From the NCBI GenBank assembly GCA_024704765.1, contig JAKMXF010000144.1, forward strand, positions 682,001-746,000: 64,000 bases of DNA, read 5' to 3'. A model generated the notes under the pieces. It made no database searches and was not told the origin of the DNA. It worked only from the letters and a program-made list of their open reading frames with translations. Positions 5,339-63,456 of this stretch are shown piece by piece. Position 1 is the first letter of the stretch. Each line of letters opens with the position of its first letter. The DNA is from Oopsacas minuta. Its lineage: Eukaryota; Animalia; Porifera. A program made the position numbers and the translations under genes.

Positions 5339-7132
5339 ATGTCTGACTCAGGGTTGCCCCAGTCTCCAGCAAGCATGGGCCTGCAACAGGAACCTGTTGA
5401 TCTTAACAGATGGAGCGAGGAGGCGGACATCCTCTTGGAGTGTACAAGTCTCACATTAAATAACTCAAAAGAACTCCTCCAAGAAATAAAAGAATCACCA
5501 TTCGAAAATACAATCTACAATATTCTAACAGAACTCTTTGACGAAAGTGAGAATGTAACTAATTTGATGGAGACAACACATGATAGTACAGGTATTACAG
5601 CTAACATGAGGAAGATGGAAGATATATTAGAACGGGAGCATATTACTGGTGGGGATGATGATACCACTATTTGTATGCAGTTTGATGAGGAAGAGATTAG
5701 TTCTACAACTCAACATGCGTATAAGGCAAAACTGTCCCAAATCAAACAAGTGAGGATATTTGTATTTAACAATTGATCTTATACTCTACTTGATTACTTT
5801 AGAAATTCTTATTTGATGCCATTTCTGACAGTAAATATATTAAATTCTTACAATTTATCTCAACAGCTGTACGACTCAGAACATCAGAAGCTAGACACTC
5901 TATGCAAAGAGTATGAGGAAGGAATGATGAGAGTATTCAGAGATCACCCCGAATGCATTCCAATTTCACAAGATAAAGTCGATACGATTATTCAGGGTTC
6001 TATGGAGCGATCTCAGTTCATTCATCTAGAACTGAAAACGAACGTAGCGGAAGCAGTACTAAGTGTAAAGAAAGGGATGTTAGAGAATAGAAACTCTAAA
6101 CGGAGAAAGAGGAATTTCAGTAAACAAGCTACAGAGATTCTTAATGAGTACTTCTACTCAAATATTGATAACCCTTACCCCTGTGATAAGATTAAGTCAG
6201 AACTCGCAGCACAGTGTAGTATCAACCTAGCACAGGTAACTACCATCATAAATAATTTGTGTATTAACTCAAATTCTAAATCCGAAATATGTGAAATATT
6301 CTAATTGTGAAATTCTCTAATATTACACTTAATTGTTAAATATTCTTTGTTAGTGGGAACTCAACTGTGTCTTACACATATTTATTTCTCATAAAATGCT
6401 ATTTCATTCAACAAATTTAAAGCTTTGCAATTATTCGGATTTGAATTTCTCATAACAAAATAATTGAATATCACAAGATTTGTGTTGTGTTAACATATTT
6501 GGTTAAGCCTTTATAACTCCCCAAGCATGTCCTACTATAAAGCAGATGTATATTGCATCTCACATCTAAGTGTTCTTGATAAAACTTGTAGCTCTTTGTT
6601 TGTAAATATGATTATACAAGCAATTTGTACAATCGTATTCCTATGAATACAAACCACTAAATTCTTTTACAACAATTTATACCAATTGAATATCGGCGAA
6701 AATTCTCATTCGCCTTTATTCAGAGCTCTTTTCAGCTCTTACACAATAATGAATATCTAATTAATAAGTTATAGAGTACACTGACCACGAAACAGATAAA
6801 TACTTGATTATTGATATTATTGCGTATATTTCACATTTATGATAGACATGTTAAAATCTAACTATCTAGTACAATCGTGCATTAAGCGTTGTAGATCGTA
6901 GGCTCAACATAAAACTGTGTATTTGGATAAATCAAAGTAATAATGTCGTATATTCCTGTAGGTCAATAACTGGTTTGGAAATAAGCGAATAAGATACAAA
7001 CGTAACATTGGTAAGGAGAACAATGGAGATTCAGAAAACAAGTCTTCAGCAACTTGTGATTCAGGTATAGGGCTTAATGAAGATGTATCATCCTCAGAAG
7101 ATGAGCTGGATTATGCAGAAGCTACAAAATAA
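5339..7132 (+). CDS. PBX: PBX-class TALE homeobox transcription factor, 3 exons (5339-5749, 5867-6235, 6962-7132)
   Basis: PBC region YKAKLSQIKQ|LYDSE, homeodomain RRKRNFSKQATEILNEYFYSNIDNPYP...LAQ|VNNWFGNKRIRYKRNIGK; GT-AG phase-0 introns keep the frame. Confidence 0.9.
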
Positions 7133-7458: not shown

Positions 7459-10200
7459 TCATGCCCATTCGAAGAATCCACACCATCTACCATTTTTTTT
7501 CGGACATCCGTAATATTTTCTACCTTTGTTACTTCCCTCTTTACATGTCATTAACTTGCTTAATTGTCCACATTCACATAATAACAATTTTGCAGTGTCA
7601 ATTTGTGACGTAATCAAATTGTTACTTATCATAATTTGTTCTTCATGTGCCCATTTGAAAAACCTACAATCTCCTCCTATTGGTTTAGGGCAGCTATAAA
7701 AATCTTTTCCTTTATTAAAACCATCTTTCGATACAGTTCTAAGTTTAGCTAATCTCCCGCATTTGCATTTTATTCCTTTAGGGTTGTCGCTAATTGACTT
7801 ATTGTTTTTAAAATATTGTATTGAGAGAGTTGGACCATCATCCTCCCATTGAAAGAATTCACATGCATTTCCTTTCTGTTTCGTACAGTTATAGAATTGT
7901 CGTCCTTTGTTTAGATTATCTTTATCAACTGTTCTCAGCTTGGCTGGATAATTACAATGACATAAGACTAAATCTCGTCTGCTTGAAAAACTGGTAGGTA
8001 TTTTCTCCATAAAATAACCTCCTTCTTGTACTTCAAATGTTTTATCCCAAACAAAGTACTCACATGAACTTGTATTACAAGTGTAGAACTTCTTGCCAGT
8101 ATTTGGCCCTGCTTTTCTAACCGTCAATAAGATAGAAGGGATTCCACAATAGCATAATTCAAGGTTATTATCATTCTCTACTGCTGTCATAGGAATTTGT
8201 GTGGATTGTATGTATGGATGCTGATTCATTCTTGAATGTCTTATTCGTGTTGATGAACTCTTTTGTTTACTGGGAGTTGTATAGGAACATTTGTGAGGCA
8301 AATGTTTAGGCTGTGTTTTTATGCTATCCCAATAGTAATGATCTCTTTCATGAGGATATTCTATACGTAATTGTTTTGGAGGGCCAAAATAATTGGAAAG
8401 AGATTCATCAATCAAGATAGCATGTGAACTGATTTCTGTGAAAACTTGTTTGTATCGATGAACCATGAAATTTATTACTTCATTTTTTTCTTTCTTACCC
8501 ACACATATGTCTGTCAGGTCTCTCTCCAATTCAGCTCTGAGGTCTGAATTGGCCAGATTGTGTCCGATTTTAGTGTACCCCTCAACCAGACCTCTGCCTA
8601 GTTTGCTGGGCAAAAGGGTACCATCCAGTTGTACATCAACATATCCTCTCATCTTGATCCTCTCGATGTGATCTGAGTGAGTAGCATCTGTACCAATTCC
8701 ATGTTCATCCATTAGCTGTATCAGGTCTGCTTCTGTCAGGTAGGAGGGAGGAGTTGTCTCACATTCTATCATCTCGATACACCCCTCTATCTGAATACGC
8801 TCCCCTTGTGTGAAGTGAGGTATTCTACGATCACACCACTCATCATACGGATACACATCAAGATAGTTTCTAGCTGTGATTATCAAGCCAGAAGCAGAAA
8901 ATGACTCTTTATTGACTAATATCTCAACTGTTGTCTCAGAGGTTTGTGCATCTTTGTGACAACAAGCCAGGAAGTGACGTGCAATAAACTCATACACTTT
9001 CCTCTCATTTCCTTGTAGACTGGAGGTGTGTTTAATTGGGTAGATAGGAGGATGAGCTTGATCTGATTTTTGTCCCTCACTTGGAGTAGGAGAGTCTCTT
9101 AGAATGTGTCTAGCTGTATCTCCCCATTGCTCAGCTCGTGTCTGTTCCTCTACTAATGGCACCAGGTTGAAGCTGGGAGGGAAGAAGTTGGTCTCTGTTC
9201 TTGGGTAACTAATCAGTCCTTGTGTGTAGAGTTTCTCAGCTATCATCATAACTTGTTTAGCACTCATGTCTAGTTTCCTGGAAGCTTTCTTCTCCAACTC
9301 TACAGTGTTTAAGGGCAGAGGTCTTGGTTCACTCTTACTCTTGGATACAACTCTATACACAATCGCTACTGACTGTTGGTTACAACCTCTTTGAGATTGT
9401 TCTGTCTCAGTACGATCCTGAATTCCCCCACGAGACCAGAAGAAGTTCACTTGAGTGTCTCCCCTCTCCACTACTGTCCTCAGTTTGTAGAACTTTTTAG
9501 GCACGAAGTGTTCCACCTGTTTACACCTATCCACCACAAATCCTAGTGTCGGGAACTGACAGGGTCCGTAGCTAACCACGTGGTTTGTTGGGAAATGATA
9601 CGGGAATACTTTCTGTAATCGAAGAGATAGGAATCTGGTGAAAGCTGCTCCTATCCTAAGATCCAACTCTTTCCTACAGTCTACAGCTGCAACTAATCTC
9701 TCGTTTATCATTTCCATCTGATTAATAGCTGTGTGAATGGATGCATAAGTTATCTCTGAGAATCTAGCTCTGTATATCTTGATACTGGGATTAGCGATGA
9801 GGCAGATATGTCTTATTTCAGATGCTATATACTCTCCTTCTCTATCACAATCTGTCCACAGTACTAGCATTTCATTCTCCTTAGCTTCTCTCACAATCGT
9901 GTTTACAATGGGCTTAGAGTCTTCAGGACAGTAGTCTTCTATTGGAGCTGTAAATAAACTGACAGGAGGATGTTTCTCCCAACTTTTGAACTCCAGACTA
10001 AAATCAATTGTCATGATGTGACCAGACACTGACGCCATTGTTATATCTGCATCATTGTTTAGCATTTTACAGGAGAATCCATAGATTTTGTTCAGTTTTG
10101 AGAGTCCTTCTCTCCTGGTGTATTTATTATTTGACATAATACGACTAATCTCTTTTGCTGTGTCATTCTTCTCTGCCACGAATAATACTTTAAGACTCAT
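7459..10200 (-). CDS. TOP3A: DNA topoisomerase III alpha-like, copy A (913 aa, 4 C-terminal GRF zinc fingers)
   Basis: TOPRIM VAEKN and WTDCDREGE, catalytic GLISYPRTET, GIGTDAT motif; CxC...GRxFYxC...CxFFxW repeats. Confidence 0.9.
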   Translation of the reverse strand: MSLKVLFVAEKNDTAKEISRIMSNNKYTRREGLSKLNKIYGFSCKMLNNDADITMASVSGHIMTIDFSLEFKSWEKHPPVSLFTAPIEDYCPEDSKPIVNTIVREAKENEMLVLWTDCDREGEYIASEIRHICLIANPSIKIYRARFSEITYASIHTAINQMEMINERLVAAVDCRKELDLRIGAAFTRFLSLRLQKVFPYHFPTNHVVSYGPCQFPTLGFVVDRCKQVEHFVPKKFYKLRTVVERGDTQVNFFWSRGGIQDRTETEQSQRGCNQQSVAIVYRVVSKSKSEPRPLPLNTVELEKKASRKLDMSAKQVMMIAEKLYTQGLISYPRTETNFFPPSFNLVPLVEEQTRAEQWGDTARHILRDSPTPSEGQKSDQAHPPIYPIKHTSSLQGNERKVYEFIARHFLACCHKDAQTSETTVEILVNKESFSASGLIITARNYLDVYPYDEWCDRRIPHFTQGERIQIEGCIEMIECETTPPSYLTEADLIQLMDEHGIGTDATHSDHIERIKMRGYVDVQLDGTLLPSKLGRGLVEGYTKIGHNLANSDLRAELERDLTDICVGKKEKNEVINFMVHRYKQVFTEISSHAILIDESLSNYFGPPKQLRIEYPHERDHYYWDSIKTQPKHLPHKCSYTTPSKQKSSSTRIRHSRMNQHPYIQSTQIPMTAVENDNNLELCYCGIPSILLTVRKAGPNTGKKFYTCNTSSCEYFVWDKTFEVQEGGYFMEKIPTSFSSRRDLVLCHCNYPAKLRTVDKDNLNKGRQFYNCTKQKGNACEFFQWEDDGPTLSIQYFKNNKSISDNPKGIKCKCGRLAKLRTVSKDGFNKGKDFYSCPKPIGGDCRFFKWAHEEQIMISNNLITSQIDTAKLLLCECGQLSKLMTCKEGSNKGRKYYGCPKKNGRWCGFFEWA

Positions 10201-12322
10201 TTTAATTGCAAATTTGTACCTGCACAGTGTTATATTGGGTTAATTTATACATAATTATTGCACGAGTTCTATGATTCCATATAGCTCCACCCACAAGCCA
10301 TTGTTATAGCTCCAGATCAAATTTCAGTTTGGTGCAATATGTGCAGCATTACAACCTAGGTTATTGATAACACTAATAAGGTATTTCTAAACAGTTAGTC
10401 GTAGCTATCGTTAATTATTTCCCTCATAACAGTTACAAAATATTTATAGCACCGCTTAAAAAATGAGTCTTAAAGTATTATTCGTGGCAGAGAAGAATGA
10501 CACAGCAAAAGAGATTAGTCGTATTATGTCAAATAATAAATACACCAGGAGAGAAGGACTCTCAAAACTGAACAAAATCTATGGATTCTCCTGTAAAATG
10601 CTAAACAATGATGCAGATATAACAATGGCGTCAGTGTCTGGTCACATCATGACAATTGATTTTAGTCTGGAGTTCAAAAGTTGGGAGAAACATCCTCCTG
10701 TCAGTTTATTTACAGCTCCAATAGAAGACTACTGTCCTGAAGACTCTAAGCCCATTGTAAACACGATTGTGAGAGAAGCTAAGGAGAATGAAATGCTAGT
10801 ACTGTGGACAGATTGTGATAGAGAAGGAGAGTATATAGCATCTGAAATAAGACATATCTGCCTCATCGCTAATCCCAGTATCAAGATATACAGAGCTAGA
10901 TTCTCAGAGATAACTTATGCATCCATTCACACAGCTATTAATCAGATGGAAATGATAAACGAGAGATTAGTTGCAGCTGTAGACTGTAGGAAAGAGTTGG
11001 ATCTTAGGATAGGAGCAGCTTTCACCAGATTCCTATCTCTTCGATTACAGAAAGTATTCCCGTATCATTTCCCAACAAACCACGTGGTTAGCTACGGACC
11101 CTGTCAGTTCCCGACACTAGGATTTGTGGTGGATAGGTGTAAACAGGTGGAACACTTCGTGCCTAAAAAGTTCTACAAACTGAGGACAGTAGTGGAGAGG
11201 GGAGACACTCAAGTGAACTTCTTCTGGTCTCGTGGGGGAATTCAGGATCGTACTGAGACAGAACAATCTCAAAGAGGTTGTAACCAACAGTCAGTAGCGA
11301 TTGTGTATAGAGTTGTATCCAAGAGTAAGAGTGAACCAAGACCTCTGCCCTTAAACACTGTAGAGTTGGAGAAGAAAGCTTCCAGGAAACTAGACATGAG
11401 TGCTAAACAAGTTATGATGATAGCTGAGAAACTCTACACACAAGGACTGATTAGTTACCCAAGAACAGAGACCAACTTCTTCCCTCCCAGCTTCAACCTG
11501 GTGCCATTAGTAGAGGAACAGACACGAGCTGAGCAATGGGGAGATACAGCTAGACACATTCTAAGAGACTCTCCTACTCCAAGTGAGGGACAAAAATCAG
11601 ATCAAGCTCATCCTCCTATCTACCCAATTAAACACACCTCCAGTCTACAAGGAAATGAGAGGAAAGTGTATGAGTTTATTGCACGTCACTTCCTGGCTTG
11701 TTGTCACAAAGATGCACAAACCTCTGAGACAACAGTTGAGATATTAGTCAATAAAGAGTCATTTTCTGCTTCTGGCTTGATAATCACAGCTAGAAACTAT
11801 CTTGATGTGTATCCGTATGATGAGTGGTGTGATCGTAGAATACCTCACTTCACACAAGGGGAGCGTATTCAGATAGAGGGGTGTATCGAGATGATAGAAT
11901 GTGAGACAACTCCTCCCTCCTACCTGACAGAAGCAGACCTGATACAGCTAATGGATGAACATGGAATTGGTACAGATGCTACTCACTCAGATCACATCGA
12001 GAGGATCAAGATGAGAGGATATGTTGATGTACAACTGGATGGTACCCTTTTGCCCAGCAAACTAGGCAGAGGTCTGGTTGAGGGGTACACTAAAATCGGA
12101 CACAATCTGGCCAATTCAGACCTCAGAGCTGAATTGGAGAGAGACCTGACAGACATATGTGTGGGTAAGAAAGAAAAAAATGAAGTAATAAATTTCATGG
12201 TTCATCGATACAAACAAGTTTTCACAGAAATCAGTTCACATGCTATCTTGATTGATGAATCTCTTTCCAATTATTTTGGCCCTCCAAAACAATTACATAT
12301 AGAATATCCTCATGAAAGAGAT
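8341..12322. repeat. Long inverted repeat: arms 8341-10200 and 10463-12322 (1,860 bp each), 262-bp spacer
   Basis: First 620 aa of the two translations are identical except R/H at ~612; nucleotide spot checks are exact reverse complements; identity starts at the ATG and stops after GAAAGAGAT. Confidence 0.92.
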
Positions 12323-13816
12323 GGAATTCCTAATACTCCACCTCGAGATATATATTCTCCTCTCCTTCCGTATGATATACATTATTTCAATCAAGAGTTT
12401 CCTGAAGTTGAAGACTACACTAAACTACTCCCTCATTTACCTTTTGAAGATTCATATAATCCCTTCAGGAACTTGTTAACAGGAAAACGTTTCACATGCG
12501 AACCATCATCTCCCAATAAGATCTTAAGGAAGGATGCTATCATAGAGTGTCATTGTGGAGAGCCTGCTGCCTTCCTGACTGTCATGAAAGGACCTGACAC
12601 CGGGAAGAAGTTCTTCAATTGTAATTCTTCATCTTGTGGGTATTTCATTTGGGAAACTGACATAGATGCAAGTATTTACCTCTATTTGGAACCTTCTAGT
12701 CAACTATTTGATGAACTTGTCAGCAAAGTTGGACATGATTTGTTATGTCACTGTGGGGATAGAGCCAGGCTTATAACTGAACGTAAAGAGGCACCTGATA
12801 AAGGAAGGAGGTTTTATGAGTGCCCGAAATTGTATGGACAGGAATGCAATTTCTTCCAATGGATTGATGCTGATCAATCAGATGCCAATACTCTTACCTC
12901 AATCTTAGATGACCTTAAGAGTAATATGTCATTGAGGGACAGTGCTCACGGAGTAATCTGTTATTGTGGTGATTCAGCAAAGTTTCTAACTGTGAAGAAA
13001 GATAGTAAGAATAAAGGCAGGAATTTTTATACCTGTCCTAAACCTACAAATCAAGAGTGTGGGTTTTTTGAGTGGGCTGATGAACTATCACAACACAATA
13101 TTAGTAGTTCGTCGTTTAGTGATAGTTGTCAATGTCATTGTGGAATAACAGCGAAGTCATTCACTGTAAAGAAAGATAGCCCGAATAAAGGTAGAAAATT
13201 CTACACCTGTCCTAAACCAAAAGTTAAAGAGTGCGGGTTCTTCCAGTGGGCTGACGGAGATATAAATTTCAGTACAAATGTATCATCATCACATACAGCT
13301 AATAATGAGGGTATTATTTGTCAATGTGAATTATCTGCCAAGGTTTTAACAGTCACAAAGGAAAGCCCAAATAAAGGAAGAACATTTTATAAATGTCCCA
13401 AACCCCGTGGTCAAGAATGTGAGTTCTTCCAATGGGATGATGAAGATCAAATTAATGCAGCAACAAATAATATAAGTTTTTCTTATGATGGTAACTCACA
13501 AGGAATTTTATGTCTATGTGGAAGATCAGCTACACTATTCACCGTAAAAAAAGATAGCGTAAATAAAGGTAGACAATTTTATACCTGTCCTAAGCCTAAA
13601 ATTCAACGATGTGATTACTTTCAATGGGCTGATGAAGATGTAACCATTGCAGAACATATGTCATTTGACGATAATTCTCAAATTGTTTGTCAATGTGGAA
13701 ATTCAGTCAAGTTGTTTACTGTGAAGAAAGACAGTCCAAACAAGGGAAGGCAATTTTATAAATGTCAGAAATCAAAAGGCCATACATGCGATTTCTTTAA
13801 ATGGGCTGATGAATAG
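10463..13816 (+). CDS. TOP3A: DNA topoisomerase III alpha-like, copy B (1117 aa, 7 C-terminal GRF zinc fingers)
   Basis: Same catalytic core as copy A; seven GRF-type fingers (e.g. CQCHCGITAKSFTVKKDSPNKGRKFYTCPKPKVKECGFFQWAD). Confidence 0.9.
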   Translation: MSLKVLFVAEKNDTAKEISRIMSNNKYTRREGLSKLNKIYGFSCKMLNNDADITMASVSGHIMTIDFSLEFKSWEKHPPVSLFTAPIEDYCPEDSKPIVNTIVREAKENEMLVLWTDCDREGEYIASEIRHICLIANPSIKIYRARFSEITYASIHTAINQMEMINERLVAAVDCRKELDLRIGAAFTRFLSLRLQKVFPYHFPTNHVVSYGPCQFPTLGFVVDRCKQVEHFVPKKFYKLRTVVERGDTQVNFFWSRGGIQDRTETEQSQRGCNQQSVAIVYRVVSKSKSEPRPLPLNTVELEKKASRKLDMSAKQVMMIAEKLYTQGLISYPRTETNFFPPSFNLVPLVEEQTRAEQWGDTARHILRDSPTPSEGQKSDQAHPPIYPIKHTSSLQGNERKVYEFIARHFLACCHKDAQTSETTVEILVNKESFSASGLIITARNYLDVYPYDEWCDRRIPHFTQGERIQIEGCIEMIECETTPPSYLTEADLIQLMDEHGIGTDATHSDHIERIKMRGYVDVQLDGTLLPSKLGRGLVEGYTKIGHNLANSDLRAELERDLTDICVGKKEKNEVINFMVHRYKQVFTEISSHAILIDESLSNYFGPPKQLHIEYPHERDGIPNTPPRDIYSPLLPYDIHYFNQEFPEVEDYTKLLPHLPFEDSYNPFRNLLTGKRFTCEPSSPNKILRKDAIIECHCGEPAAFLTVMKGPDTGKKFFNCNSSSCGYFIWETDIDASIYLYLEPSSQLFDELVSKVGHDLLCHCGDRARLITERKEAPDKGRRFYECPKLYGQECNFFQWIDADQSDANTLTSILDDLKSNMSLRDSAHGVICYCGDSAKFLTVKKDSKNKGRNFYTCPKPTNQECGFFEWADELSQHNISSSSFSDSCQCHCGITAKSFTVKKDSPNKGRKFYTCPKPKVKECGFFQWADGDINFSTNVSSSHTANNEGIICQCELSAKVLTVTKESPNKGRTFYKCPKPRGQECEFFQWDDEDQINAATNNISFSYDGNSQGILCLCGRSATLFTVKKDSVNKGRQFYTCPKPKIQRCDYFQWADEDVTIAEHMSFDDNSQIVCQCGNSVKLFTVKKDSPNKGRQFYKCQKSKGHTCDFFKWADE

Positions 13817-13965
13817 AGGAATACTGAAAGTATTTATACCACACCCCTCTTAACTTAAAAAGTTCTCTTTGGTTTTGACAAATTTTGATTTGACGTTTTG
13901 TCTAACTGTAGTAGAGGTTATACATAATTTGTATTGAATGAATACCTGATTCCTTTGAAACTTAC

Positions 13966-14155
13966 TTATCTTGTTCCCATCAAATTTCTTGACTTTTATT
14001 TTGATACAACCTTCTTCTTCTAATCGTATTTTATACTGTAAATCTTGCAAGGTAATATTTTCATTGAGATCTGAGAGCAGAGGGTCTTGTGATAAGCTGC
14101 GGAGAATACTCTCCCTCAGATTGGTTATTGTATCTTTTTCTAGATTTTTAGTCAT
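13966..14155 (-). CDS. SNRNP25: SNRNP25 (U11/U12 snRNP 25 kDa) exon 1
   Basis: MTKN...SQDPLLSDLNENITLQDLQYKIRLEEEGCIKIKVKKFDGNKI resembles QDPLLCDLPIQVTLEEVNSQIALEYGQAMTVRVCKMDGEVM; phase-1 donor ATA A|GTAAG at 13965. Confidence 0.75.
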
Positions 14156-14456
14156 CCTTATCACGCTCTGGATATTTAGAATAATTAGCCGTGTAAGTTT
14201 TGAGGTTTTAACTATACTCCCAACAAGAACTTTTGTCCCATATTTTAAGCAATTAGACGCTATTAGGCAAATATCATATATGAATCCATTCCCATTAATA
14301 CGAACTCCGATACGATAATAATAAATATCAAATCGTTATCTACGTTATTCACGCGCTCAATTTTCTTAGAAATTATCATTTCTGTTTACTATGTGAACTA
14401 GATACATTTTCATGCATTAGCATTACATACATATTTGGATATATTGATAAGACAAC

Positions 14457-17180
14457 ATGCAAACTCCAATTGAGTCTCCTCCTCCTCCACCTACAATAAC
14501 AGATTCTCCTCAATCTATTAATAATAGTTCCAAGAATGACCTCCCTACATTATCACCCGGACTGATACTAACCCTGCCCCCTACTAACTCTGAGTATGAT
14601 ATTGCTCCTCCGGATAATCCTATAGAGTTACATGCACCTATTGACTCTATATTCACGACAGGAGACTCCTCAGGAAATGAGAGATCAGATAATAGTTCGG
14701 AGGGAGAGGAACAAAACGAACCCATAACTGAAGTGAAATTTAGCTCATTTCGAAAAGCACATGCAAAGAAAAGGTTGAATTTCAATAAAGACTCTGATAA
14801 AATAACTCGTAAGAGTGCTAAGCCTAAGAGAGAGGATCCTATATCTGTACACAGTGAGACACAGAGAATGATACGAGAATCTAAAATACATATACCTGAG
14901 TATAAACCGCCCGTTATTACTCTACAAGATGTTATGAAGAAACTTCCTAAGTTAACAAACAACACAGATGCTAAACCTGAAATATTTGTGACAACTCTTG
15001 CATCCCCTGTCTCCCTCTCTGCTCAAACAACTTCCACACCTCTCCCCAAGGCTGGACCAGCTCAAACAGATATGGACATGGAAGATCTACCTGATATTGA
15101 TTTCATATCTGAGCAACCGATTGAGAGATTAGAACTTACTGAAATAGTAGAACAGATACCTAAACCTAAACAAACTAATTCCAATCAACCAGCTCTGTCA
15201 CTACCTAACGACTTCACCAATCTAAATCTAGCTACAAATATTGATGCTCCTGTATTATCCTCACTAGAAGCTTTCAAGAGTAGATTCATTCATCATTCCC
15301 TTCCTCCCGATAAGTCACACACCTCTGTCCCTCTATCCTCTGAAACTACAGAGAATGAGGGACCCCTCTTGCCTCCTGGATTGTCTCAGAAGCCTGGAGG
15401 TCTACACGCCTTCCTGAAAGAGAAGCTACGTAGGAGTTTAATAGCTAAGCGGATACAGGAGCATGAACAGCTGGAGCTTAAACTAAAGTATGAAAATGAG
15501 GAGTTTTTTCCTTCTGAGGGATCATGTAGTGAGGCTGAGGATGTAGAGAGAGGAGAGGCTGTCAAGTTAATGGATGCCGGAGAGGGAGAGGTTAACGGGG
15601 AGTGGCAGCCTGAGGGAGGAGACGAGATAAGTCATTCTGAAGATAATAACGATACCAGTAGCAGTGAAAGTGAGAGTGACAGTGAAACAAGTGAATCAGA
15701 AGAGAGTGAGATAGACAGTTCTAATACAGATACAGAAGGAGAAGATGGTATAATAATGCCAACTCACAAAGCTAAAAGACATGTACTGAATGACTCAGAT
15801 AATGATGATGACTTTGGAGATGAATCAGCTGTTAATTTAGATATACAGATATCACAGCCTTTAATTCTTGATTCCCCACCTAATATACCCTCACTACTAC
15901 TTGTACAGAGTCCAACCCTTCAGCTGGAGAATGAGAAGGAGAGTGATCTAAATTCTTCTATAAATACATCATTTACATTTCCTAATATAGATGCACAACA
16001 AAGTTTCAATCTTCCAACTGCTTTTCAGCTGTCTACACAGAGCTACATTCCAGATGACCTTAAGCGTATCTGTGATGCTACACAAGAGGGAGAGAATGAT
16101 ATACAGTTAATATGCTCAGGGAGATTCACACAAGCTACACAGCCTGATGAGCTAAATAGAAATAATGACGTCATTCCTAACGACAGCAGCTTACAACTAG
16201 ATAATACTGTAGATACAGATCTTCCAATGTTAGCTCCACGTAAGATAAAGGTTAAGGATCAGCTGAGATTAAAAAGATACAGACAGCTGGCAGCTTTTGA
16301 GGAGAAAGAAGCAGAGCTATCAGGTTCAGATCCTGAGTTTGAAGGGTCTGATTGTGCCAGTGAATTCGGTAACGAGTTGGATGAGTACGAGAGTGAGGAT
16401 GGAGACCAGGATTTAGTGGAAAGTGAAGAGGTCGAAAGGTTAAACGCGAAATATTACAACCAAGTTATGATAGAAGATGATGAAGCTAACATGGAGCTGC
16501 TTAAAGAGAGATTTCTCCCTGAACAGGATATTGTAGAAGATGGTTTAAGATTAAAGAATGGTTTATTTCGTAAGAGAAAGTTTAATTTTGATGATGATGA
16601 TGATATTTCTAGCTCAGCTGCTTGTGATTGGGATGAAGATGGACGTGATCAGGATGTAGACCAGGTAACACAAGAGAGACGAAGGAGACGTGTAGAGAGA
16701 GAGGATTATATTGCTCGTAAATTCAAGTATTCTTTATCGGATTTAACATCCACTGATACAACCAGGACTTTACCTCTTCTAGACAAGCCCAATATTATTC
16801 GATCAGTTAGCTGTGAGCAGAAAAATACTTGTTTCAATGTTCCTTCTATTAGAAAGTCTCTTGGCAAACATAATTCTCTTCTTACACGCAATTTTGCTGC
16901 TAAACTCGATTCGAATTTTATTTCCGATTCAAATAGTGGAGGTAATCTTGTAGGAAGGAAGTCTTACGTGTTTCAGACGATCCGGTCACTTGAAGGGGGA
17001 GATAGTGGTAATTCTGTTCCTCCATTAATTAAATCTGCATCTCTCCCTCCTCCTAGTAGCTCTGTTGGAAGTAAGAAGAATAATTTTAGTAAAAATACTA
17101 AGCTACAACCTGAATTGAAGAAAGAAGATTCATTTCTTAAGCCTGGTTCTAGTGTGTTTCATTTGCTCAATGTTAATTAA
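14457..17180 (+). CDS. CLSPN: Claspin (Chk1 mediator), intronless
   Basis: HSETQRMIRESKIHIPEY motif, Chk1-binding-like IQLICSGRFTQ, FEEKEAELSGSD motif, acidic tracts. Confidence 0.85.
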   Translation: MQTPIESPPPPPTITDSPQSINNSSKNDLPTLSPGLILTLPPTNSEYDIAPPDNPIELHAPIDSIFTTGDSSGNERSDNSSEGEEQNEPITEVKFSSFRKAHAKKRLNFNKDSDKITRKSAKPKREDPISVHSETQRMIRESKIHIPEYKPPVITLQDVMKKLPKLTNNTDAKPEIFVTTLASPVSLSAQTTSTPLPKAGPAQTDMDMEDLPDIDFISEQPIERLELTEIVEQIPKPKQTNSNQPALSLPNDFTNLNLATNIDAPVLSSLEAFKSRFIHHSLPPDKSHTSVPLSSETTENEGPLLPPGLSQKPGGLHAFLKEKLRRSLIAKRIQEHEQLELKLKYENEEFFPSEGSCSEAEDVERGEAVKLMDAGEGEVNGEWQPEGGDEISHSEDNNDTSSSESESDSETSESEESEIDSSNTDTEGEDGIIMPTHKAKRHVLNDSDNDDDFGDESAVNLDIQISQPLILDSPPNIPSLLLVQSPTLQLENEKESDLNSSINTSFTFPNIDAQQSFNLPTAFQLSTQSYIPDDLKRICDATQEGENDIQLICSGRFTQATQPDELNRNNDVIPNDSSLQLDNTVDTDLPMLAPRKIKVKDQLRLKRYRQLAAFEEKEAELSGSDPEFEGSDCASEFGNELDEYESEDGDQDLVESEEVERLNAKYYNQVMIEDDEANMELLKERFLPEQDIVEDGLRLKNGLFRKRKFNFDDDDDISSSAACDWDEDGRDQDVDQVTQERRRRRVEREDYIARKFKYSLSDLTSTDTTRTLPLLDKPNIIRSVSCEQKNTCFNVPSIRKSLGKHNSLLTRNFAAKLDSNFISDSNSGGNLVGRKSYVFQTIRSLEGGDSGNSVPPLIKSASLPPPSSSVGSKKNNFSKNTKLQPELKKEDSFLKPGSSVFHLLNVN

Positions 17181-21673: not shown

Positions 21674-22699
21674 ATGGACTATATAGTGCAACCTTTCGTG
21701 ACATACGTCACTAACTGGAATGAAATATTCATAATGTTTATGAGCGTGTGGCGTTACCAACGTCCTGACAGTCTAGGCCCTTCAGGATGGTACCAGTTCT
21801 TCAAACAAGAGTACAAGGTGATACTTGGGTCATGTACCATGGACATGGAATTTATAATATACACACTTGCCATTGGTGCTCTAATAACTATTATTAGAAT
21901 TGGAAGTCAAAAACTGATTTTGGACAAGATCCCTATCTGGTTGGATATGAATGAAGAATCACGTGATAAATTCCCTGAATCATTATTCCGTCTAATTAGT
22001 TACATTTTCCTTTGGTCCTGTACTAGTTATGTTGTCTTATTCTCCAATTATCCCATACTGGATGGTCCCGATACCATGTGGAGTGATTTCAGTGGTGTGT
22101 CTACTATAATAGCTCCTGATATATTTTTCGTATACGTATTACAATGTGGCTACTATGTGCATTGTGCATACGCTAATATTGCCCTAGACGTACATCGAAC
22201 TGATTTCTGGGCGCTAATGCTTCACCACGTGGTTACCCTGAGTCTCATATCATTCTCTTATGCTTCCAGATACCACAATGTTGGCATAATTGTAATATTC
22301 CTGCATGACATATGTGATATATTTCTTGAAATAGCAAAGTGTTCAAGATATCTCCAGGTGTTAGGTGGTAAGTCATATTTTATATCAGACATAGTGTCAG
22401 CTATCGCGTTTGTATTATTCTCATCTTCATGGGTGTGGCTTCGTTTATATTGGTTCCAGACTAAAGTACTTATGGGTACTGCTGTAGCCTCAATGGTATT
22501 GGACATGGATGGAGAGTTCTATTTAGTATTCAATGTCTTGCTTCTGGTTCTATACGGACTTAACTTGTACTGGTTCTTCTTCATAGTGCTAGTTGTGTAT
22601 GATATTATAACAGGGGTCGGATTATCTGATAATAGAGAGACTGAATTGATGGAGAAGTCTAGAGAAGAAGTTCGTAAGAGGAAAGAGAAAACTCATTGA
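21674..22699 (+). CDS. CERS1: Ceramide synthase (TLC/Lag1, no homeodomain; CERS1-like), copy A
   Basis: Lag1 motif RTDFWALMLHHVVTLSLISFSY...HDICD; multi-pass hydrophobic protein. Confidence 0.85.
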   Translation: MDYIVQPFVTYVTNWNEIFIMFMSVWRYQRPDSLGPSGWYQFFKQEYKVILGSCTMDMEFIIYTLAIGALITIIRIGSQKLILDKIPIWLDMNEESRDKFPESLFRLISYIFLWSCTSYVVLFSNYPILDGPDTMWSDFSGVSTIIAPDIFFVYVLQCGYYVHCAYANIALDVHRTDFWALMLHHVVTLSLISFSYASRYHNVGIIVIFLHDICDIFLEIAKCSRYLQVLGGKSYFISDIVSAIAFVLFSSSWVWLRLYWFQTKVLMGTAVASMVLDMDGEFYLVFNVLLLVLYGLNLYWFFFIVLVVYDIITGVGLSDNRETELMEKSREEVRKRKEKTH

Positions 22700-23146
22700 T
22701 TGAAGAGCAATAGAATCAAGCATGTTTCGGTAGAGTTAGTTGTACAATAAAATTTAATGGAAATTATCTATCATTATTAGATGTTGCGTTTTTTCGATAT
22801 TTTAGAACTATATTTATTATTATTTGCACTTTTTCTGAACATTTCTAAACCGGACAATCTATACAACAATTGTGTGTTGTTTAAGCTCCTTTTCACATAG
22901 TTCATAATTAGCCGGAGGTTCTAATCTCTAGCATCGTTTTAGGATATCAAAGAAGGTCCGAAATGTAATATATTGGGAAAACCCGCGATTATGATAACAA
23001 ATATCCCAGAGCCCAAGTAAATATTTGATATGACTTGAATTGCGAATCGTGTAAATTTCATATTTGCATTTTTAATGTGTTTGGCAAAAATTATTCTTTT
23101 CAATCTCCACTCCACTAGCAGATTGTCTGATAATCTTTCTCTAAGT

Positions 23147-24169
23147 ATGGACTATATAGTTCAACCTTTCGTGACATACGTCACTAACTGGAATGAGATA
23201 TTCACAATGTTTATGAGCGTGTGGCGTTACCAACGTCCTGACAGTTTAGGCCCTGCAGGATGGTACCAGTTCTTCAAACAAGAGTACAAGGAGATACTTA
23301 TGTCATGTACCATGGACATGGAATTTATAATATACACACTTGCCATTGGTGCTCTAATAACTATTATTAGAATTGGAAGTCAAAAACTGATTTTGGACAA
23401 GATTCCTATCTGGTTGGATATGAATGAAGAATCACGTGATAAATTCCCTGAATCATTATTCCGTCTAATTAGTTACATTTTCATTTGGTCCTGTACTAGT
23501 TATGTTATTTTATTCTCCAATTATCCCATACTGGATGATCCAGATTACATGTGGAGTGATTTCAGTGGCGTGTCTACTATAATAGCTCCTGATATATTTT
23601 TCGTATACGTATTACAATGTGGCTACTATGTGCATTGTGCATACGCTAATATTGCCCTAGACGTACATCGAGCTGATTTCTGGGCGCTAATGCTTCACCA
23701 CGTGGTTACCCTGAGTCTCATATCATTCTCTTATGCTTCCAGATACCACAATGTTGGCATCGCTGTAGTATTCCTGCATGACATATGTGATATATTCATT
23801 GAGTTAGCAAAGTGTGGGTTATATCTACAAGTGCTAGGAGGTAAGAAATATTGGTTACCTGATAAAGTCTCTACTGTTGCGTTTATAACATTCACATCTT
23901 TGTGGGTGTGGTTACGTTTGTATTGGTTCCAGACTAAAGTGCTCATGTCTACAGCTGTAGCTTCTATGCAATTCGACATGGATGGAGAATTCTATTTGAT
24001 TTTCAATGTATTGCTTTTGATTCTATACGGACTCAATCTATACTGGTTCTTCTTCATATTATTGATAATAGTCGACATTTTAAGCGGTGGGGAATTGGCT
24101 GATAAACGAGAGGAAGAATTAGTGGCGAAGACAAGGGCAGAAATTTTGAAGAGAAAGAAGCAGACTTAA
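23147..24169 (+). CDS. CERS1: Ceramide synthase (CERS1-like), tandem copy B
   Basis: Lag1 motif RADFWALMLHHVVT...HDICD; ATG at 23147 matches the copy A start MDYIVQPF. Confidence 0.85.
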   Translation: MDYIVQPFVTYVTNWNEIFTMFMSVWRYQRPDSLGPAGWYQFFKQEYKEILMSCTMDMEFIIYTLAIGALITIIRIGSQKLILDKIPIWLDMNEESRDKFPESLFRLISYIFIWSCTSYVILFSNYPILDDPDYMWSDFSGVSTIIAPDIFFVYVLQCGYYVHCAYANIALDVHRADFWALMLHHVVTLSLISFSYASRYHNVGIAVVFLHDICDIFIELAKCGLYLQVLGGKKYWLPDKVSTVAFITFTSLWVWLRLYWFQTKVLMSTAVASMQFDMDGEFYLIFNVLLLILYGLNLYWFFFILLIIVDILSGGELADKREEELVAKTRAEILKRKKQT

Positions 24170-53202: not shown

Positions 53203-53587
53203 TATAGTAGTAAGTGTGTATATTACTGAACATTCAATGATAATGTACTTAGTTCATGTAATTGTACAATTCTTAATTCCTAAAATTGCACATATTTACA
53301 TTCGCATTTCACCAGGTGCACACATAGCAGAATATCATGAAACTTTTTAGTGCAGCTCCTATAGGGAAGTTGGCATGGATGACTGGCTGTAACACGTTCC
53401 TTGGATCCTGCGAAATCGAGCAATTCGATTAAAATTAAAATTGCCACAGACTAGCTTACGGACAGGGAGATTATTCGAAGTGAAAATTGTTCACTCTCGA
53501 CCCCAAATTCTATGAAATGTCTTCACTAAATTACTAAAACATAATTATTTAGTTACTATTGTAATTACTAATTTTACTTGAAGTGAG

Positions 53588-54412
53588 ATGGCTAGTATAT
53601 TACCAGGTAAGAAGATAGCACTAGTGACTGGGGGAGGAAGTGGTATAGGCAGAACTACTGCTGTCAAGTTCTCTATAAACGGATACAATGTGATAGTAGC
53701 AGACATTGATAAGAAATCAGCTGATCAGACTGTAGAATTATTGAAAACAGAAGGATTAGCTGTTGAGGTTGATGTCACAATTGAATCTCAGGTGGAGGCA
53801 ATGGTGAAAGCAGGTGTGGATAGGTTTGGTAGAATTGATGCCTGTTTTAATAATGCTGGGATTAACTGTAGCCATGCTGATATATCTAATGTATCTTATG
53901 AAGTTTTCTCAAAGGTCATGGATGTAAACGTAATAGGAACATTTCTATGCATGAAGCATGAACTAAAACAATTTCTACAACAAGAACCGTTAGAAATAGA
54001 GTTAGATAATAGTGTAGTAGATCCTAACGTTAGTGAGGCTCTACTAGCTAAATCGGCTCCTAAGCCAGTTAGAGGATATATTGTTAATATGAGTAGTATA
54101 GCTGGTGTTATGGGTGTTAGATTTATCTCTCCGTATGTAGCGTCTAAATGGGCAGTTGTGGGGTTGACAAAAGCCGCGGGACAAGAATACGCCTCTAGCG
54201 GTATTCTAATTAACTGCATTTGTCCAGCATTCACGGCCAGTAAGATGTCAGAACAGTTTAGTGATAGACTTAAAGGCAGTATAATATCTAGGATGGGTGT
54301 AGGGAGGTTCTGTACAGCTGCTGAGTTAGCAGAGATAGTCATATGGTTGTGTTCTGGGAAATGTACTTTCATGGCTGGAGAGGTTATCACCATCAGTGGG
54401 AGTTCTGTATAG
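53588..54412 (+). CDS. Classical short-chain dehydrogenase/reductase, copy A
   Basis: TGGGSGIG, NNAG, catalytic S...YVASK, INCICP. Confidence 0.9.
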   Translation: MASILPGKKIALVTGGGSGIGRTTAVKFSINGYNVIVADIDKKSADQTVELLKTEGLAVEVDVTIESQVEAMVKAGVDRFGRIDACFNNAGINCSHADISNVSYEVFSKVMDVNVIGTFLCMKHELKQFLQQEPLEIELDNSVVDPNVSEALLAKSAPKPVRGYIVNMSSIAGVMGVRFISPYVASKWAVVGLTKAAGQEYASSGILINCICPAFTASKMSEQFSDRLKGSIISRMGVGRFCTAAELAEIVIWLCSGKCTFMAGEVITISGSSV

Positions 54413-62395: not shown

Positions 62396-62631
62396 CTAAA
62401 TATACGATTGTGAGAAATATCTAAATACGTACTTATTTAAAAAATTTTTATCTTTCTATTTACGTATGGTACGTATTTATGAATACATGCAGCCGTGCAT
62501 GATATTATATCCGCAAGTATGTATTGTCTCAACTAGAGAAATATACGTATAGTAATTGTGTATACAGAATTTTTCTTTATTATTCTAAACATTGTAAAAG
62601 TCATACGTTATCAATTGACCTTTATAGTGAG

Positions 62632-63456
62632 ATGGCTAGTATATTACCAGGTAAGAAGATAGCACTAGTGACTGGGGGAGGAAGTGGTATAGGCAGAACT
62701 ACTGCTGTCAAGTTCTCTATAAACGGATACAATGTGATAGTAGCAGACATTGATAAGAAATCAGCTGATCAGACTGTAGAATTATTGAAAACAGAAGGAT
62801 TAGCTGTTGAGGTTGATGTCACAATTGAATCTCAGGTGGAGGCAATGGTGAAAGCAGGTGTGGATAGGTTTGGTAGAATTGATGCCTGTTATAATAATGC
62901 AGGAATAGCTAGCCCAAGAACTAGGGTTCCTAATGTAAAGAGCGAAGATTTCTCCAGAGTAATGGATGTGAATGTGAAAGGAGTATTTCTATGCATGAAG
63001 TATGAAATACAACAATTTCTACAACAAGAACCGTTAGAAATAGAGTTAGATAATAGTGTAGTAGATCCTAACGTTAGTGAGGCTTTACTAGCTAAATCAG
63101 CTCCTAAGCCAGTTAGAGGATATATTGTTAATATGAGTAGTATCTTAGGTGAAATTCCACTACCGGGATCTTCCCCTTATGTAGCATCTAAATGGGCAGT
63201 TATAGGTTTAAGCAAGACAGCAGCTAGTGAGTATGCAAATGATGGTATTCTGATAAACTGCATTTGTCCTAGTTTTTCTGCTAGTATACTGGTTGATAAA
63301 CTTAGTGAGAATATGAAGGAGAAACTAATTGCCCGAACTAGTTCGGGTAGGTTTGGAACTCAAGCTGAGATAGCAGAGACAGTTCTCTGGTTGTGTTCTG
63401 GTAAATGTACGTATATGGTTGGAGAGGCCATTACTATTAGTGGAGGTTTTGTTTAA
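62632..63456 (+). CDS. Classical short-chain dehydrogenase/reductase, copy B
   Basis: Same 825-nt length and motifs as copy A (TGGGSGIG, NNAG, YVASK); ATG at 62632. Confidence 0.9.
   Translation: MASILPGKKIALVTGGGSGIGRTTAVKFSINGYNVIVADIDKKSADQTVELLKTEGLAVEVDVTIESQVEAMVKAGVDRFGRIDACYNNAGIASPRTRVPNVKSEDFSRVMDVNVKGVFLCMKYEIQQFLQQEPLEIELDNSVVDPNVSEALLAKSAPKPVRGYIVNMSSILGEIPLPGSSPYVASKWAVIGLSKTAASEYANDGILINCICPSFSASILVDKLSENMKEKLIARTSSGRFGTQAEIAETVLWLCSGKCTYMVGEAITISGGFV

What the first reader, a model, noticed from the sequence alone, without database searches (positions are those of the whole stretch)
7459..13816. Palindromic TOP3A gene pair: identical catalytic core, different zinc-finger tails
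Two intronless TOP3A ORFs diverge head-to-head from a 262-bp spacer. The first 1,860 nt (620 codons: TOPRIM plus the whole type IA core) are near-perfect reverse complements; I see one difference, CAT/CGT near codon 612. Identity starts at the ATG and stops abruptly where the tails begin. The tails are clearly diverged and both open, and the spacer is not self-complementary. Old divergent tails on a homogenised core suggest ongoing arm-to-arm gene conversion, giving one enzyme with two alternative ssDNA/partner-binding modules. Animals normally have a single TOP3A. A decatenase gene sitting in a cruciform-prone palindrome is unusual, and I know of no description of this arrangement.
Basis: partly seen in the sequence, partly recalled or inferred. 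Interest (0 to 1): 0.82.

Follow-up and report, generated by a model that had tools for sequence, protein, structure and literature searches.

The report
Gene-converted inverted TOP3A-like gene pair
A glass sponge carries an extra, mirror-image copy of a sponge-specific topoisomerase III-alpha-like gene; the catalytic halves of the two copies have been overwritten to identity by gene conversion while their zinc-finger tails diverged, which is a clear but not new kind of event.

Summary
Arms 8341-10203 and 10460-12322 are 1863-nt reverse complements with one mismatch (codon 612, CGT in A, CAT in B). They run from 3 nt before each ATG to codon 620. Two open genes result: A (913 aa, 4 GRF fingers) and B (1117 aa, 7 GRF fingers).

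The assembly statistics fit Oopsacas minuta. These are not the canonical TOP3A, which lies on another contig (991 aa), as does TOP3B. A and B belong to a glass-sponge-only TOP3A offshoot with seven GRF fingers.

Six other glass-sponge assemblies have one such gene at the same syntenic place. B keeps the ancestral tail, so A is a copy added in the O. minuta line.

Synonymous divergence is 0 in the core and about 1.1 in the tails. A's tail evolves 3-6 times faster than B's but stays open with all zinc ligands.

Best reading: an old inverted duplicate whose core was recently homogenised by gene conversion, bounded by loss of homology. That conversion is still ongoing is inferred.

The hybrid SPAdes assembly may hide sparse differences between the arms.

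The mechanism is well known (Siglec-11/16, Hsp70, Y palindromes). Unchecked notes of this scan list similar inverted pairs elsewhere in this genome. Interest is moderate to low.

The parts
7459..10200 (-). Gene A: TOP3A-like type IA topoisomerase, 913 aa, Toprim + Topoisom_bac core and 4 GRF zinc fingers. It is the derived, added copy.
   Evidence: absent from the syntenic locus of six relatives
10463..13816 (+). Gene B: TOP3A-like type IA topoisomerase, 1117 aa, same core and 7 GRF zinc fingers. It is the positional and structural orthologue of the single gene in relatives.
   Evidence: synteny
8341..10203 (-). Left arm of the inverted repeat: codons 1-620 of A plus 3 nt upstream
10460..12322 (+). 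Right arm of the inverted repeat: 3 nt upstream plus codons 1-620 of B
10204..10459 (.). Unique, non-palindromic 256-nt spacer between the arms. It is inferred to be a shared divergent promoter region.
   Evidence: promoter role is inference only
8366..8366 (-). The only arm difference, A side (codon 612, CGT Arg), 26 nt inside the outer arm edge
12297..12297 (+). The only arm difference, B side (codon 612, CAT His)
7459..8340 (-). Tail of A: a linker that has lost the conserved motifs, plus 4 GRF fingers with all 16 zinc ligands kept. It is unique in the genome and fast-evolving.
12323..13816 (+). Tail of B: the ancestral linker (PPRDIY and NPF..L.GKRF..SSP.K motifs) plus 7 GRF fingers
6948..7120 (.). 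Conserved element that lies 315-720 nt upstream of the ATG of the single gene in relatives. Here it lies beyond A's stop codon, so A sits inside B's former upstream intergenic region.
13850..14164 (-). Conserved minus-strand exon just downstream of B. It is the candidate first exon of a host gene whose intron holds PBX and the TOP3A-like genes.
   Evidence: no Pfam hit; idea from note s1-304991

Best explanation
Glass sponges have, besides canonical TOP3A and TOP3B, a third type IA topoisomerase. It is a TOP3A-derived gene whose C-terminus is a run of seven GRF zinc fingers. In the O. minuta lineage this gene (B) was duplicated in inverted orientation into its own upstream intergenic region, giving copy A, head-to-head with B. 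The duplication is old: tail dS is about 1.1. A's tail then evolved 3-6 times faster than B's. It lost three fingers and the conserved linker motifs, yet stayed open and kept its zinc ligands. The catalytic cores were recently, and probably repeatedly, homogenised by intrachromosomal gene conversion between the inverted arms. The converted block covers the whole stretch where the two genes are still alignable. It stops where homology ends: at the ATG on one side and at the indel-rich linker after codon 620 on the other. The result is two enzymes with one catalytic core and different DNA- or partner-binding tails. Shown: the anatomy, the family placement, the single-copy state in relatives, the dS contrast and the rate asymmetry. 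Inferred: conversion as the mechanism, its recurrence, use of the spacer as a promoter, and any functional division of labour.
For: Arms 1863 nt with 1 mismatch. Core dS 0 against tail pS 0.58 / dS 1.1 for A-B. The same tail columns give pS 0.74 for B against P0003, and core dS is 1.08 for B against P0003. The tails are collinear homologues, finger 1 with finger 1 and so on. A's tail best matches B's tail in the whole genome. The syntenic locus KH-ATG13-PBX-[one gene]-small minus exon is seen in five ENA assemblies and one Logan contig, with no second TOP3- or GRF-like sequence within 10 kb of the gene in the five ENA loci or on the 5-kb Logan contig. In the core tree the multi-GRF clade has 100/100 support and A+B 100/100. 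Relative-rate counts for A-unique versus B-unique changes are 60:12, 67:10, 51:18 and 47:24. A's tail has 0 stops in 293 codons against 14-38 in the other frames; P(no stop) is about 2e-11 from base composition. The core aligns end to end with human TOP3A 4CGY (E 2e-204) and the SYPRTET catalytic-tyrosine motif and DCDREGE are kept. The window contains no N, and A's tail DNA is single-copy in the assembly.
Against: No reads, population data or RNA-seq could be consulted. The assembly is hybrid SPAdes + SSPACE + Pilon + GapFiller (PMC10280926). From my knowledge of SPAdes, sparse differences between long repeats can be merged. The only surviving difference lies 26 nt from the unique flank, which is shorter than the largest k-mer of 99, so true arm identity may be lower than 99.95%. 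The tail tree cannot place A firmly: its branch is 1.46 and the A+B clade is neither recovered nor rejected (AU p 0.19). An older duplication with loss in relatives is therefore not excluded. No independent sequence of A's tail or its junction was found in the protein collection. GC3 gives no signal of biased conversion: core exceeds tail in single-copy relatives too.
Confidence: 0.75

Rival explanations
1. A single recent event rather than ongoing concerted evolution. One long conversion, or a second partial inverted re-duplication by template switching, replaced A's old core with B's (or the reverse). The arms will now diverge.
For: One snapshot with 1 difference in 1863 nt cannot separate one event from many. 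There is no gBGC signal.
Against: A single tract would be expected to end somewhere inside the alignable core and leave a zone of intermediate divergence. Instead identity fills the whole homologous block, from the ATG to the start of the unalignable linker. That fits repeated events limited by homology. Unchecked scan notes list several other inverted pairs with identical tracts in this genome.
Confidence: 0.25
2. Assembly-inflated identity. Both genes are real, but their cores differ by up to a few per cent, and the graph assembler and polishing collapsed them to one consensus written twice.
For: The assembly method is SPAdes hybrid with Pilon. The sole difference lies within k-mer reach of the unique flank.
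Against: Even a few per cent of divergence would leave the contrast with the tails (about 40% nucleotide difference, dS 1.1) intact, so the conclusion of conversion stands. A pure fold-back artefact cannot create a diverged, open, homologous tail or a unique 256-nt spacer. No alternative contig exists.
Confidence: 0.25
3. Ancient pair. The inverted duplication predates the split from the P0003-P0005 clade or is older, A was lost in the other lineages, and only O. minuta kept it.
For: The tail tree leaves A unresolved. A's tail is 34-40% identical to the orthologues against 44% to B. A's finger 1 keeps some residues shared with the canonical TOP3A and the P0006 clade.
Against: It requires one to three independent losses. 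Synonymous difference A-B (pS 0.58) is lower than A or B against P0003 (0.74-0.75) in the same columns. The long A branch is explained by a significant rate acceleration.
Confidence: 0.15
4. Copy A is a decaying or redundant duplicate, with its tail drifting, whose core looks healthy only because B keeps repairing it by conversion.
For: A's tail has lost three fingers and the conserved linker motifs. Its dN/dS against B is 0.47, compared with 0.11-0.20 among orthologues. No transcript evidence was found.
Against: There are 293 codons with no stop or frameshift at dS of about 1.1, all 16 zinc ligands and the G-[RK]-x-[FY] motifs are kept in four fingers, and dN/dS is still below 1.
Confidence: 0.1

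Closest known systems
Canonical animal TOP3A (human TOP3A, PDB 4CGY; BLM-TOP3A-RMI1-RMI2 dissolvasome and mitochondrial decatenase)
   Same: Toprim + type IA core aligned end to end (53-54% identity to animal TOP3A; E 2e-204 to 4CGY), with the catalytic SYPRTET tyrosine and acidic Toprim residues present. The C-terminus carries GRF zinc fingers.
   Different: Not the orthologue: O. minuta has its own canonical TOP3A on C255 with two GRF fingers, a CCHC knuckle and a C4-like motif in the alignment (no Pfam zf-C4 hit). A and B lack the Zn-C4 and CCHC elements described for TOP3A (PMC9178014, PMC9369019) and carry 4 or 7 GRF fingers instead. They form a separate, faster-evolving clade.
SIGLEC11/SIGLEC16 paired receptors (PMC5701461)
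   Same: Two paralogues are kept nearly identical in one functional domain by gene conversion, while the rest of each protein differs and gives different outputs.
   Different: These are immune receptors, not enzymes, and the genes are not a tight head-to-head palindrome. The comparison rests on the paper's abstract.
Inverted duplicate genes under concerted evolution: stress-inducible Hsp70 pairs (PMC5865164), Caenorhabditis paralogues (PMC3966223), annelid Dlx (PMC3199776), Y-chromosome palindromes (PMC3403216)
   Same: Arm-to-arm intrachromosomal gene conversion keeps coding sequence identical while flanks diverge, and the identity block is bounded by loss of homology.
   Different: In those cases whole genes are usually homogenised. 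Here only the N-terminal two thirds are, giving a chimeric pair with different C-termini. The arms are short (1.9 kb) with a 256-nt spacer.
TOP3A with expanded GRF tails in other animals (Magallana gigas, Solemya velum, Lingula anatina)
   Same: The best non-sponge matches to B's tail are TOP3A proteins with extra GRF fingers.
   Different: Those keep the zf-C4_Topoisom domain (PF01396) and are named TOP3A by their sources. Identity to B's tail is only 33-43% over part of its length.

Membership tests
Type IA DNA topoisomerase, TOP3A branch | Toprim domain followed by the type IA (Topoisom_bac) core | tested here: met
   Pfam PF01751 and PF01131 hit both proteins, at E 1e-109 for the core.
Type IA DNA topoisomerase, TOP3A branch | Catalytic tyrosine motif and acidic Toprim residues present | tested here: met
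   GLISYPRTET aligns with GYISYPRTET of human TOP3A 4CGY, and DCDREGE and the AEK glutamate are kept.
Type IA DNA topoisomerase, TOP3A branch | Closer to TOP3A than to TOP3B | tested here: met
   684 bits to TOP3A against 353 bits to TOP3B structures. Identity is 66% to the sponge's canonical TOP3A and 36% to its TOP3B, which carries Zn_ribbon_TOP3B.
Canonical animal TOP3A orthologue | C-terminal architecture of Zn-C4, then two GRF fingers, then CCHC (PMC9178014, PMC9369019) | tested here: not met
   There is no PF01396 or CCHC hit; A has 4 and B has 7 GRF fingers only. The gene on C255 has two GRF fingers, a CCHC knuckle and a C4-like motif.
Canonical animal TOP3A orthologue | Groups with the one-per-genome TOP3A lineage in a tree | tested here: not met
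   A and B fall in a separate 100/100 clade with six multi-GRF proteins. O. minuta's NCBI-named TOP3A (P0008) groups with the canonical glass-sponge sequences.
Canonical animal TOP3A orthologue | Binding to RMI1/BLM and topoisomerase activity | not testable with these tools
   This needs biochemistry.
Gene-converted inverted paralogue pair (concerted evolution) | The converted tract is far less diverged at synonymous sites than homologous flanking sequence of the same genes | tested here: met
   Core dS is 0 and tail dS about 1.1, with a sharp step at codon 620.
Gene-converted inverted paralogue pair (concerted evolution) | The duplication is older than the identity of the tract implies | tested here: met
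   Tail pS of 0.58 is comparable to the divergence between species P0006 and P0007 (0.58). A has lost three fingers and the linker motifs.
Gene-converted inverted paralogue pair (concerted evolution) | Repeated or ongoing exchange: shared polymorphism between arms, or independent homogenisation in sister taxa | not testable with these tools
   No population or read data were available, and the relatives lack the pair.
Assembly fold-back artefact | A perfect palindrome with no or adapter-like spacer, no independent sequence beyond the arms, and gaps or a contig end nearby | tested here: not met
   The spacer is a unique 256 nt, the two flanks are distinct, open and homologous but diverged, the window contains no N, and the locus lies inside a 796-kb contig.

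The most novel reading that the evidence does not exclude
The pair is a selected 'one core, two tails' system. Conversion keeps a single catalytic module co-evolving with shared partners, while tail A (4 fingers, new linker) and tail B (7 fingers, ancestral linker) direct it to different DNA structures or partners. Crossovers between the arms would flip the 256-nt spacer and swap promoter halves between the two genes, so both spacer orientations could coexist. Because the pair appears to lie in an intron of a minus-strand host gene, the host pre-mRNA would also carry a 1.86-kb perfect hairpin. The underlying seven-GRF TOP3A offshoot would be an undescribed third type IA topoisomerase of glass sponges.
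Probability: 0.15. Interest if true: 0.55.

Novelty: new member of a known kind. Interest (0 to 1): 0.35.

Why it matters
For evolutionary genomics, this is a clean, datable example of domain-limited concerted evolution. One enzyme core is held identical in two genes while the substrate- or partner-binding tails diverge asymmetrically.

For topoisomerase biology, the more useful by-product is that glass sponges carry a conserved, syntenic, TOP3A-derived third type IA topoisomerase. It has seven GRF fingers and no Zn-C4 or CCHC elements. No paper held in the library pairs TOP3A with the phrase 'GRF zinc finger' for sponges. If the two O. minuta tails bind different DNA structures, they would be a natural experiment on what the poorly understood TOP3A C-terminal fingers do.

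For users of this genome, it is a warning: identical inverted tracts in this hybrid assembly should be checked against reads before they are dated.

Tried and rejected
- **Fold-back or chimeric assembly artefact.** Rejected as the whole explanation. The spacer is unique, both tails are diverged but homologous and open, the window has no N, and there are no alternative contigs. It is kept only as a caveat on the exact arm identity.
- **Chimeric origin of A's tail from another GRF gene.** Rejected. A whole-genome search finds B's tail as the best match and it is collinear (46%, E 2e-53); the canonical TOP3A comes next.
- **Remnant homology of the 3' flanks of A and B, and self-complementarity of the spacer.** None found. 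The outer limit of the original duplication therefore cannot be mapped.
- **Homology of the spacer to the upstream regions of the orthologues.** Only faint matches (best E 0.015), so this is inconclusive.
- **GC-biased conversion signal (GC3 of core versus tail).** Uninformative, because core exceeds tail in single-copy relatives too.
- **Independent sequence or transcripts of A's tail and junction.** The word search over 205-654 aa proteins returned nothing. This says nothing about expression.
- **Whether Logan contig L011 is RNA or DNA.** It could not be decided. The contig is collinear with the genomic loci, and the run accession appears in no held paper.
- **Pfam naming of the minus-strand exon after B as SNRNP25.** No hit.
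- **Not run.** The large representative-protein search and structure prediction, because the family assignment was already unambiguous.
Full report
**Observation.** The region holds two long divergent ORFs: A at 7459-10200(-), 913 aa, and B at 10463-13816(+), 1117 aa.
- The repeat finder reports a single large inverted repeat in the whole 64-kb window. Its arms are 8341-10203 and 10460-12322, 1863 nt, 256 nt apart.
- A base-by-base comparison from the two ATGs gives one mismatch at CDS nt 1835. That is window 8366 (A) and 12297 (B), codon 612, CGT Arg in A and CAT His in B. From nt 1861 on, nearly every position differs in an ungapped comparison.
- Identity also covers the 3 nt (AAA) before each ATG.
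- A gapped nucleotide alignment shows a step from 100% identity to a gap-rich, poor alignment exactly after codon 620.
- The 262-nt inter-ATG spacer is not self-complementary apart from a 10-nt palindrome.
- Both proteins have Toprim, the type IA core and GRF zinc fingers, four in A and seven in B.

**Which genome, and how it was assembled.** The window is C144:682001-746000 of a 61.46-Mb, 365-contig assembly.
- Those figures, and a G+C near 36%, match the published Oopsacas minuta (Hexactinellida) genome. That genome was assembled with SPAdes from Illumina plus Canu-corrected PacBio reads, scaffolded with SSPACE, polished with Pilon and gap-filled (PMC10280926).
- An earlier scan note named the species. 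The best-scoring named relative in the protein search is also 'DNA topoisomerase 3-alpha [Oopsacas minuta]'.
- The rest of the window is ordinary compact eukaryotic gene content: KH, ATG13, PBX, TLC, bHLH, eIF2A, OBG, NHL, SDR and GTPases.

**What the genes are.** The core aligns end to end with human TOP3A (PDB 4CGY, E 2e-204). The catalytic SYPRTET tyrosine motif and the DCDREGE Toprim motif are intact. TOP3B structures score half as much.
- The genome contains four TOP3 genes: A, B, a 991-aa gene on C255 (66% identical in the core) and an 885-aa gene on C222 (36%).
- The C222 gene has the TOP3B zinc ribbon and an RG-rich end, so it is TOP3B.
- The C255 gene has two GRF fingers, a terminal CCHC knuckle and a C4-like motif after the core. 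This is close to the architecture described for TOP3A (PMC9178014, PMC9369019). NCBI names it TOP3A (P0008).
- A and B lack the C4 and CCHC elements.
- In a core tree, A and B fall with six unnamed proteins (P0003-P0007, P0012) in a 100/100 clade on a long stem. That clade sits among the canonical glass-sponge TOP3A sequences.
- The six unnamed proteins are 1115-1182 aa long. Seven fingers are counted in P0003, P0005 and P0006 by motif search and in P0003 and P0006 by Pfam; the motif search finds 5-6 in the other three.
- A search with B's tail finds only these six as close relatives. The next hits are oyster, Solemya and Lingula TOP3A, which have extra GRF fingers but keep the C4 domain.
- So the pair belongs to a glass-sponge-specific, TOP3A-derived third type IA topoisomerase, not to the TOP3A orthologue.

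**Relatives have one gene, not a pair.** Five ENA assemblies (L005-L009) show the same neighbourhood: KH, ATG13, a PBX homeobox gene, then one multi-GRF TOP3A-like gene on the plus strand, then a small conserved minus-strand exon.
- tblastn with protein A and with B's tail finds nothing else within 10 kb on either side.
- A sixth species, known from a 5-kb Logan contig, is collinear and also single-copy over 950 nt upstream.
- A conserved element of about 170 nt lies 315-720 nt upstream of the ATG in the relatives. In O. minuta it lies at 6948-7120, beyond A's stop codon. A therefore sits inside what used to be B's upstream intergenic region.
- B keeps the seven fingers and the conserved linker motifs (PPRDIY, NPF..L.GKRF..SSP.K). 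A has four fingers and a linker that no longer aligns.
- B is therefore the positional orthologue and A is the added copy.

**Age of the duplication and state of the two halves.** The tails are collinear homologues. A's finger 1 matches B's finger 1 best, including the unusual short 'SSC' spacing. In the whole genome A's tail matches B's tail best (46%, E 2e-53).

| Comparison (226 tail codons filled in all species; 620 core codons; Nei-Gojobori) | Tail pS | Tail dS | Tail dN/dS | Core dS |
|---|---|---|---|---|
| A vs B | 0.58 | about 1.1 | 0.47 | 0 |
| B vs P0003 | 0.74 | 3.06 (saturated) | 0.11 | 1.08 |
| A vs P0003 | 0.75 | 3.98 (saturated) | 0.17 | 1.08 |
| P0006 vs P0007 | 0.58 | 1.10 | 0.18 | 0.62 |

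- The A-B core has one non-synonymous difference and no synonymous one.
- The duplication is therefore old, of the order of an inter-species split within this group. It is probably younger than the split from the P0003-P0005 clade. Without exchange, the cores should differ at a large share of their synonymous sites.
- The tail tree puts A on a 1.46 substitutions/site branch against 0.29 for B. It can neither recover nor reject an A+B clade (AU p 0.19).
- Relative-rate counts show that A's tail changed 3-6 times more often than B's: 60:12, 67:10, 51:18 and 47:24 with four outgroups.
- A's tail still has no stop in 293 codons, while the other five frames have 14-38. P(no stop) is about 2e-11 from base composition. 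All 16 zinc ligands and the GRF motifs are kept. It has been under constraint, though a relaxed or altered one.

**Mechanism.** The dS contrast within one pair of genes is the standard signature of non-allelic gene conversion. Inverted orientation at short distance is the geometry in which conversion can occur without deleting the interval.
- The identical block covers the whole stretch where the two genes remain alignable. It ends at the ATG, where the upstream sequences are unrelated, and at the indel-rich linker after codon 620.
- A single tract would be expected to end at arbitrary points inside the core and leave intermediate-divergence shoulders. None is present.
- I therefore favour repeated conversion limited by homology, but this is an inference from one snapshot.
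- The single difference, 26 nt from the outer edge, fits the lower conversion frequency expected at tract margins. It also fits the assembly caveat below.
- A crossover between the arms would invert the spacer and swap promoter halves between A and B. This is a testable by-product.

**Caveats.**
- Assembly: from my knowledge of SPAdes (not tested here), sparse differences inside long near-identical repeats can be merged into one graph edge and written twice. The one surviving difference lies within reach of the largest k-mer (99) of unique sequence. True arm identity could thus be somewhat lower than 99.95%.
- That does not change the conclusion, since the tails differ by roughly 40% at the nucleotide level.
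- A pure fold-back artefact is excluded by the unique spacer, the two different open homologous tails, the absence of N, and the absence of alternative contigs.
- 'Cruciform-prone' is doubtful with a 256-nt spacer (my knowledge, not tested).
- Expression could not be checked. A search for fragments of A's tail and junction found nothing, which is uninformative.
- GC3 shows no conversion bias, because core exceeds tail in single-copy relatives too.

**Comparison with what is known.** Partial gene conversion that keeps one domain identical between paralogues with different remainders is well described.
- Examples are SIGLEC11/16 (PMC5701461), inducible Hsp70 pairs (PMC5865164), Caenorhabditis paralogues (PMC3966223), annelid Dlx (PMC3199776) and Y-chromosome palindromes (PMC3403216), all listed.
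- Unchecked notes of this scan list further inverted pairs with identical tracts in the same genome: an ABCG NBD tract, a Maf-gene palindrome and a HEN1 pair. I did not test them, and they are not independent support.
- The case is therefore a new member of a known kind.
- What appears undescribed is its occurrence in a type IA topoisomerase, and the existence of the seven-GRF TOP3A offshoot in glass sponges. Only two held papers contain both 'TOP3A' and 'GRF zinc finger', and neither concerns sponges.

**Function (inferred).**
- GRF fingers are ssDNA-binding modules.
[quoted passage not shown] The zinc-finger domain is considered dispensable for catalysis (PMC9178014).
- B probably carries on the ancestral role of the multi-GRF enzyme.
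- A has the same catalytic core and a shortened, remodelled tail. It is either a sub- or neo-functionalised variant with altered DNA or partner preference (my preferred reading) or a relaxed duplicate whose core is kept intact by conversion from B.

**Verdict.** Novelty is 'new member of a known kind' and interest is 0.35.

Noticed in passing
window 53582-54411 and 62626-63455: Two direct SDR (adh_short) paralogues 9 kb apart show graded identity: 99% over 281 nt, then 90%, then 75%. This looks like another partial conversion tract in the same window.
   Followed up: no
window 21674-22699 and 23075-24169: A tandem pair of TLC-domain (ceramide-synthase-like) genes, 95% identical over at least 300 nt.
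   Followed up: no
window 13850-14164 (-); L005 13474-13692 and 5246-5368 (-): A minus-strand exon (..SQDPLLSDL..KVKKFDG..) is conserved right after the multi-GRF TOP3A-like gene in all six relatives. A second minus-strand exon lies upstream of PBX in L005 and L006. Pfam gave no hit, so the name is unconfirmed. If the idea is right, the host pre-mRNA in O. minuta would contain a 1.86-kb perfect hairpin.
   Followed up: partly
window 6948-7120: An element of about 170 nt is conserved at 69-77% with L005, L006, L007 and L009, upstream of the TOP3A-like gene. Its nature is unknown; it could be a regulatory element or the last PBX exon.
   Followed up: partly
G000 C255:31798-33627 (L003 355-3330, -): The canonical O. 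minuta TOP3A and the canonical glass-sponge TOP3A proteins carry no Pfam zf-C4_Topoisom hit, although a CxxC...C....C motif follows the core. Neither this gene nor A/B has an N-terminal extension before the Toprim domain in its ORF, so how a mitochondrial TOP3A isoform would be made here is open.
   Followed up: no
window 14457-17180 (+); L005 14078-16822: A 907-aa ORF with no Pfam family lies downstream of the pair. It is conserved as a 914-aa ORF in L005. In L007-L009 a gene of more than 3200 aa with faint or weak AAA-family Pfam hits occupies that place.
   Followed up: no
L008 6324-9113 (-): In one relative, three consecutive minus-strand ORFs (568, 173 and 209 aa, no Pfam) lie between PBX and the TOP3A-like gene. 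They are not TOP3- or GRF-like by tblastn. They may be an insertion or a frameshifted gene.
   Followed up: partly
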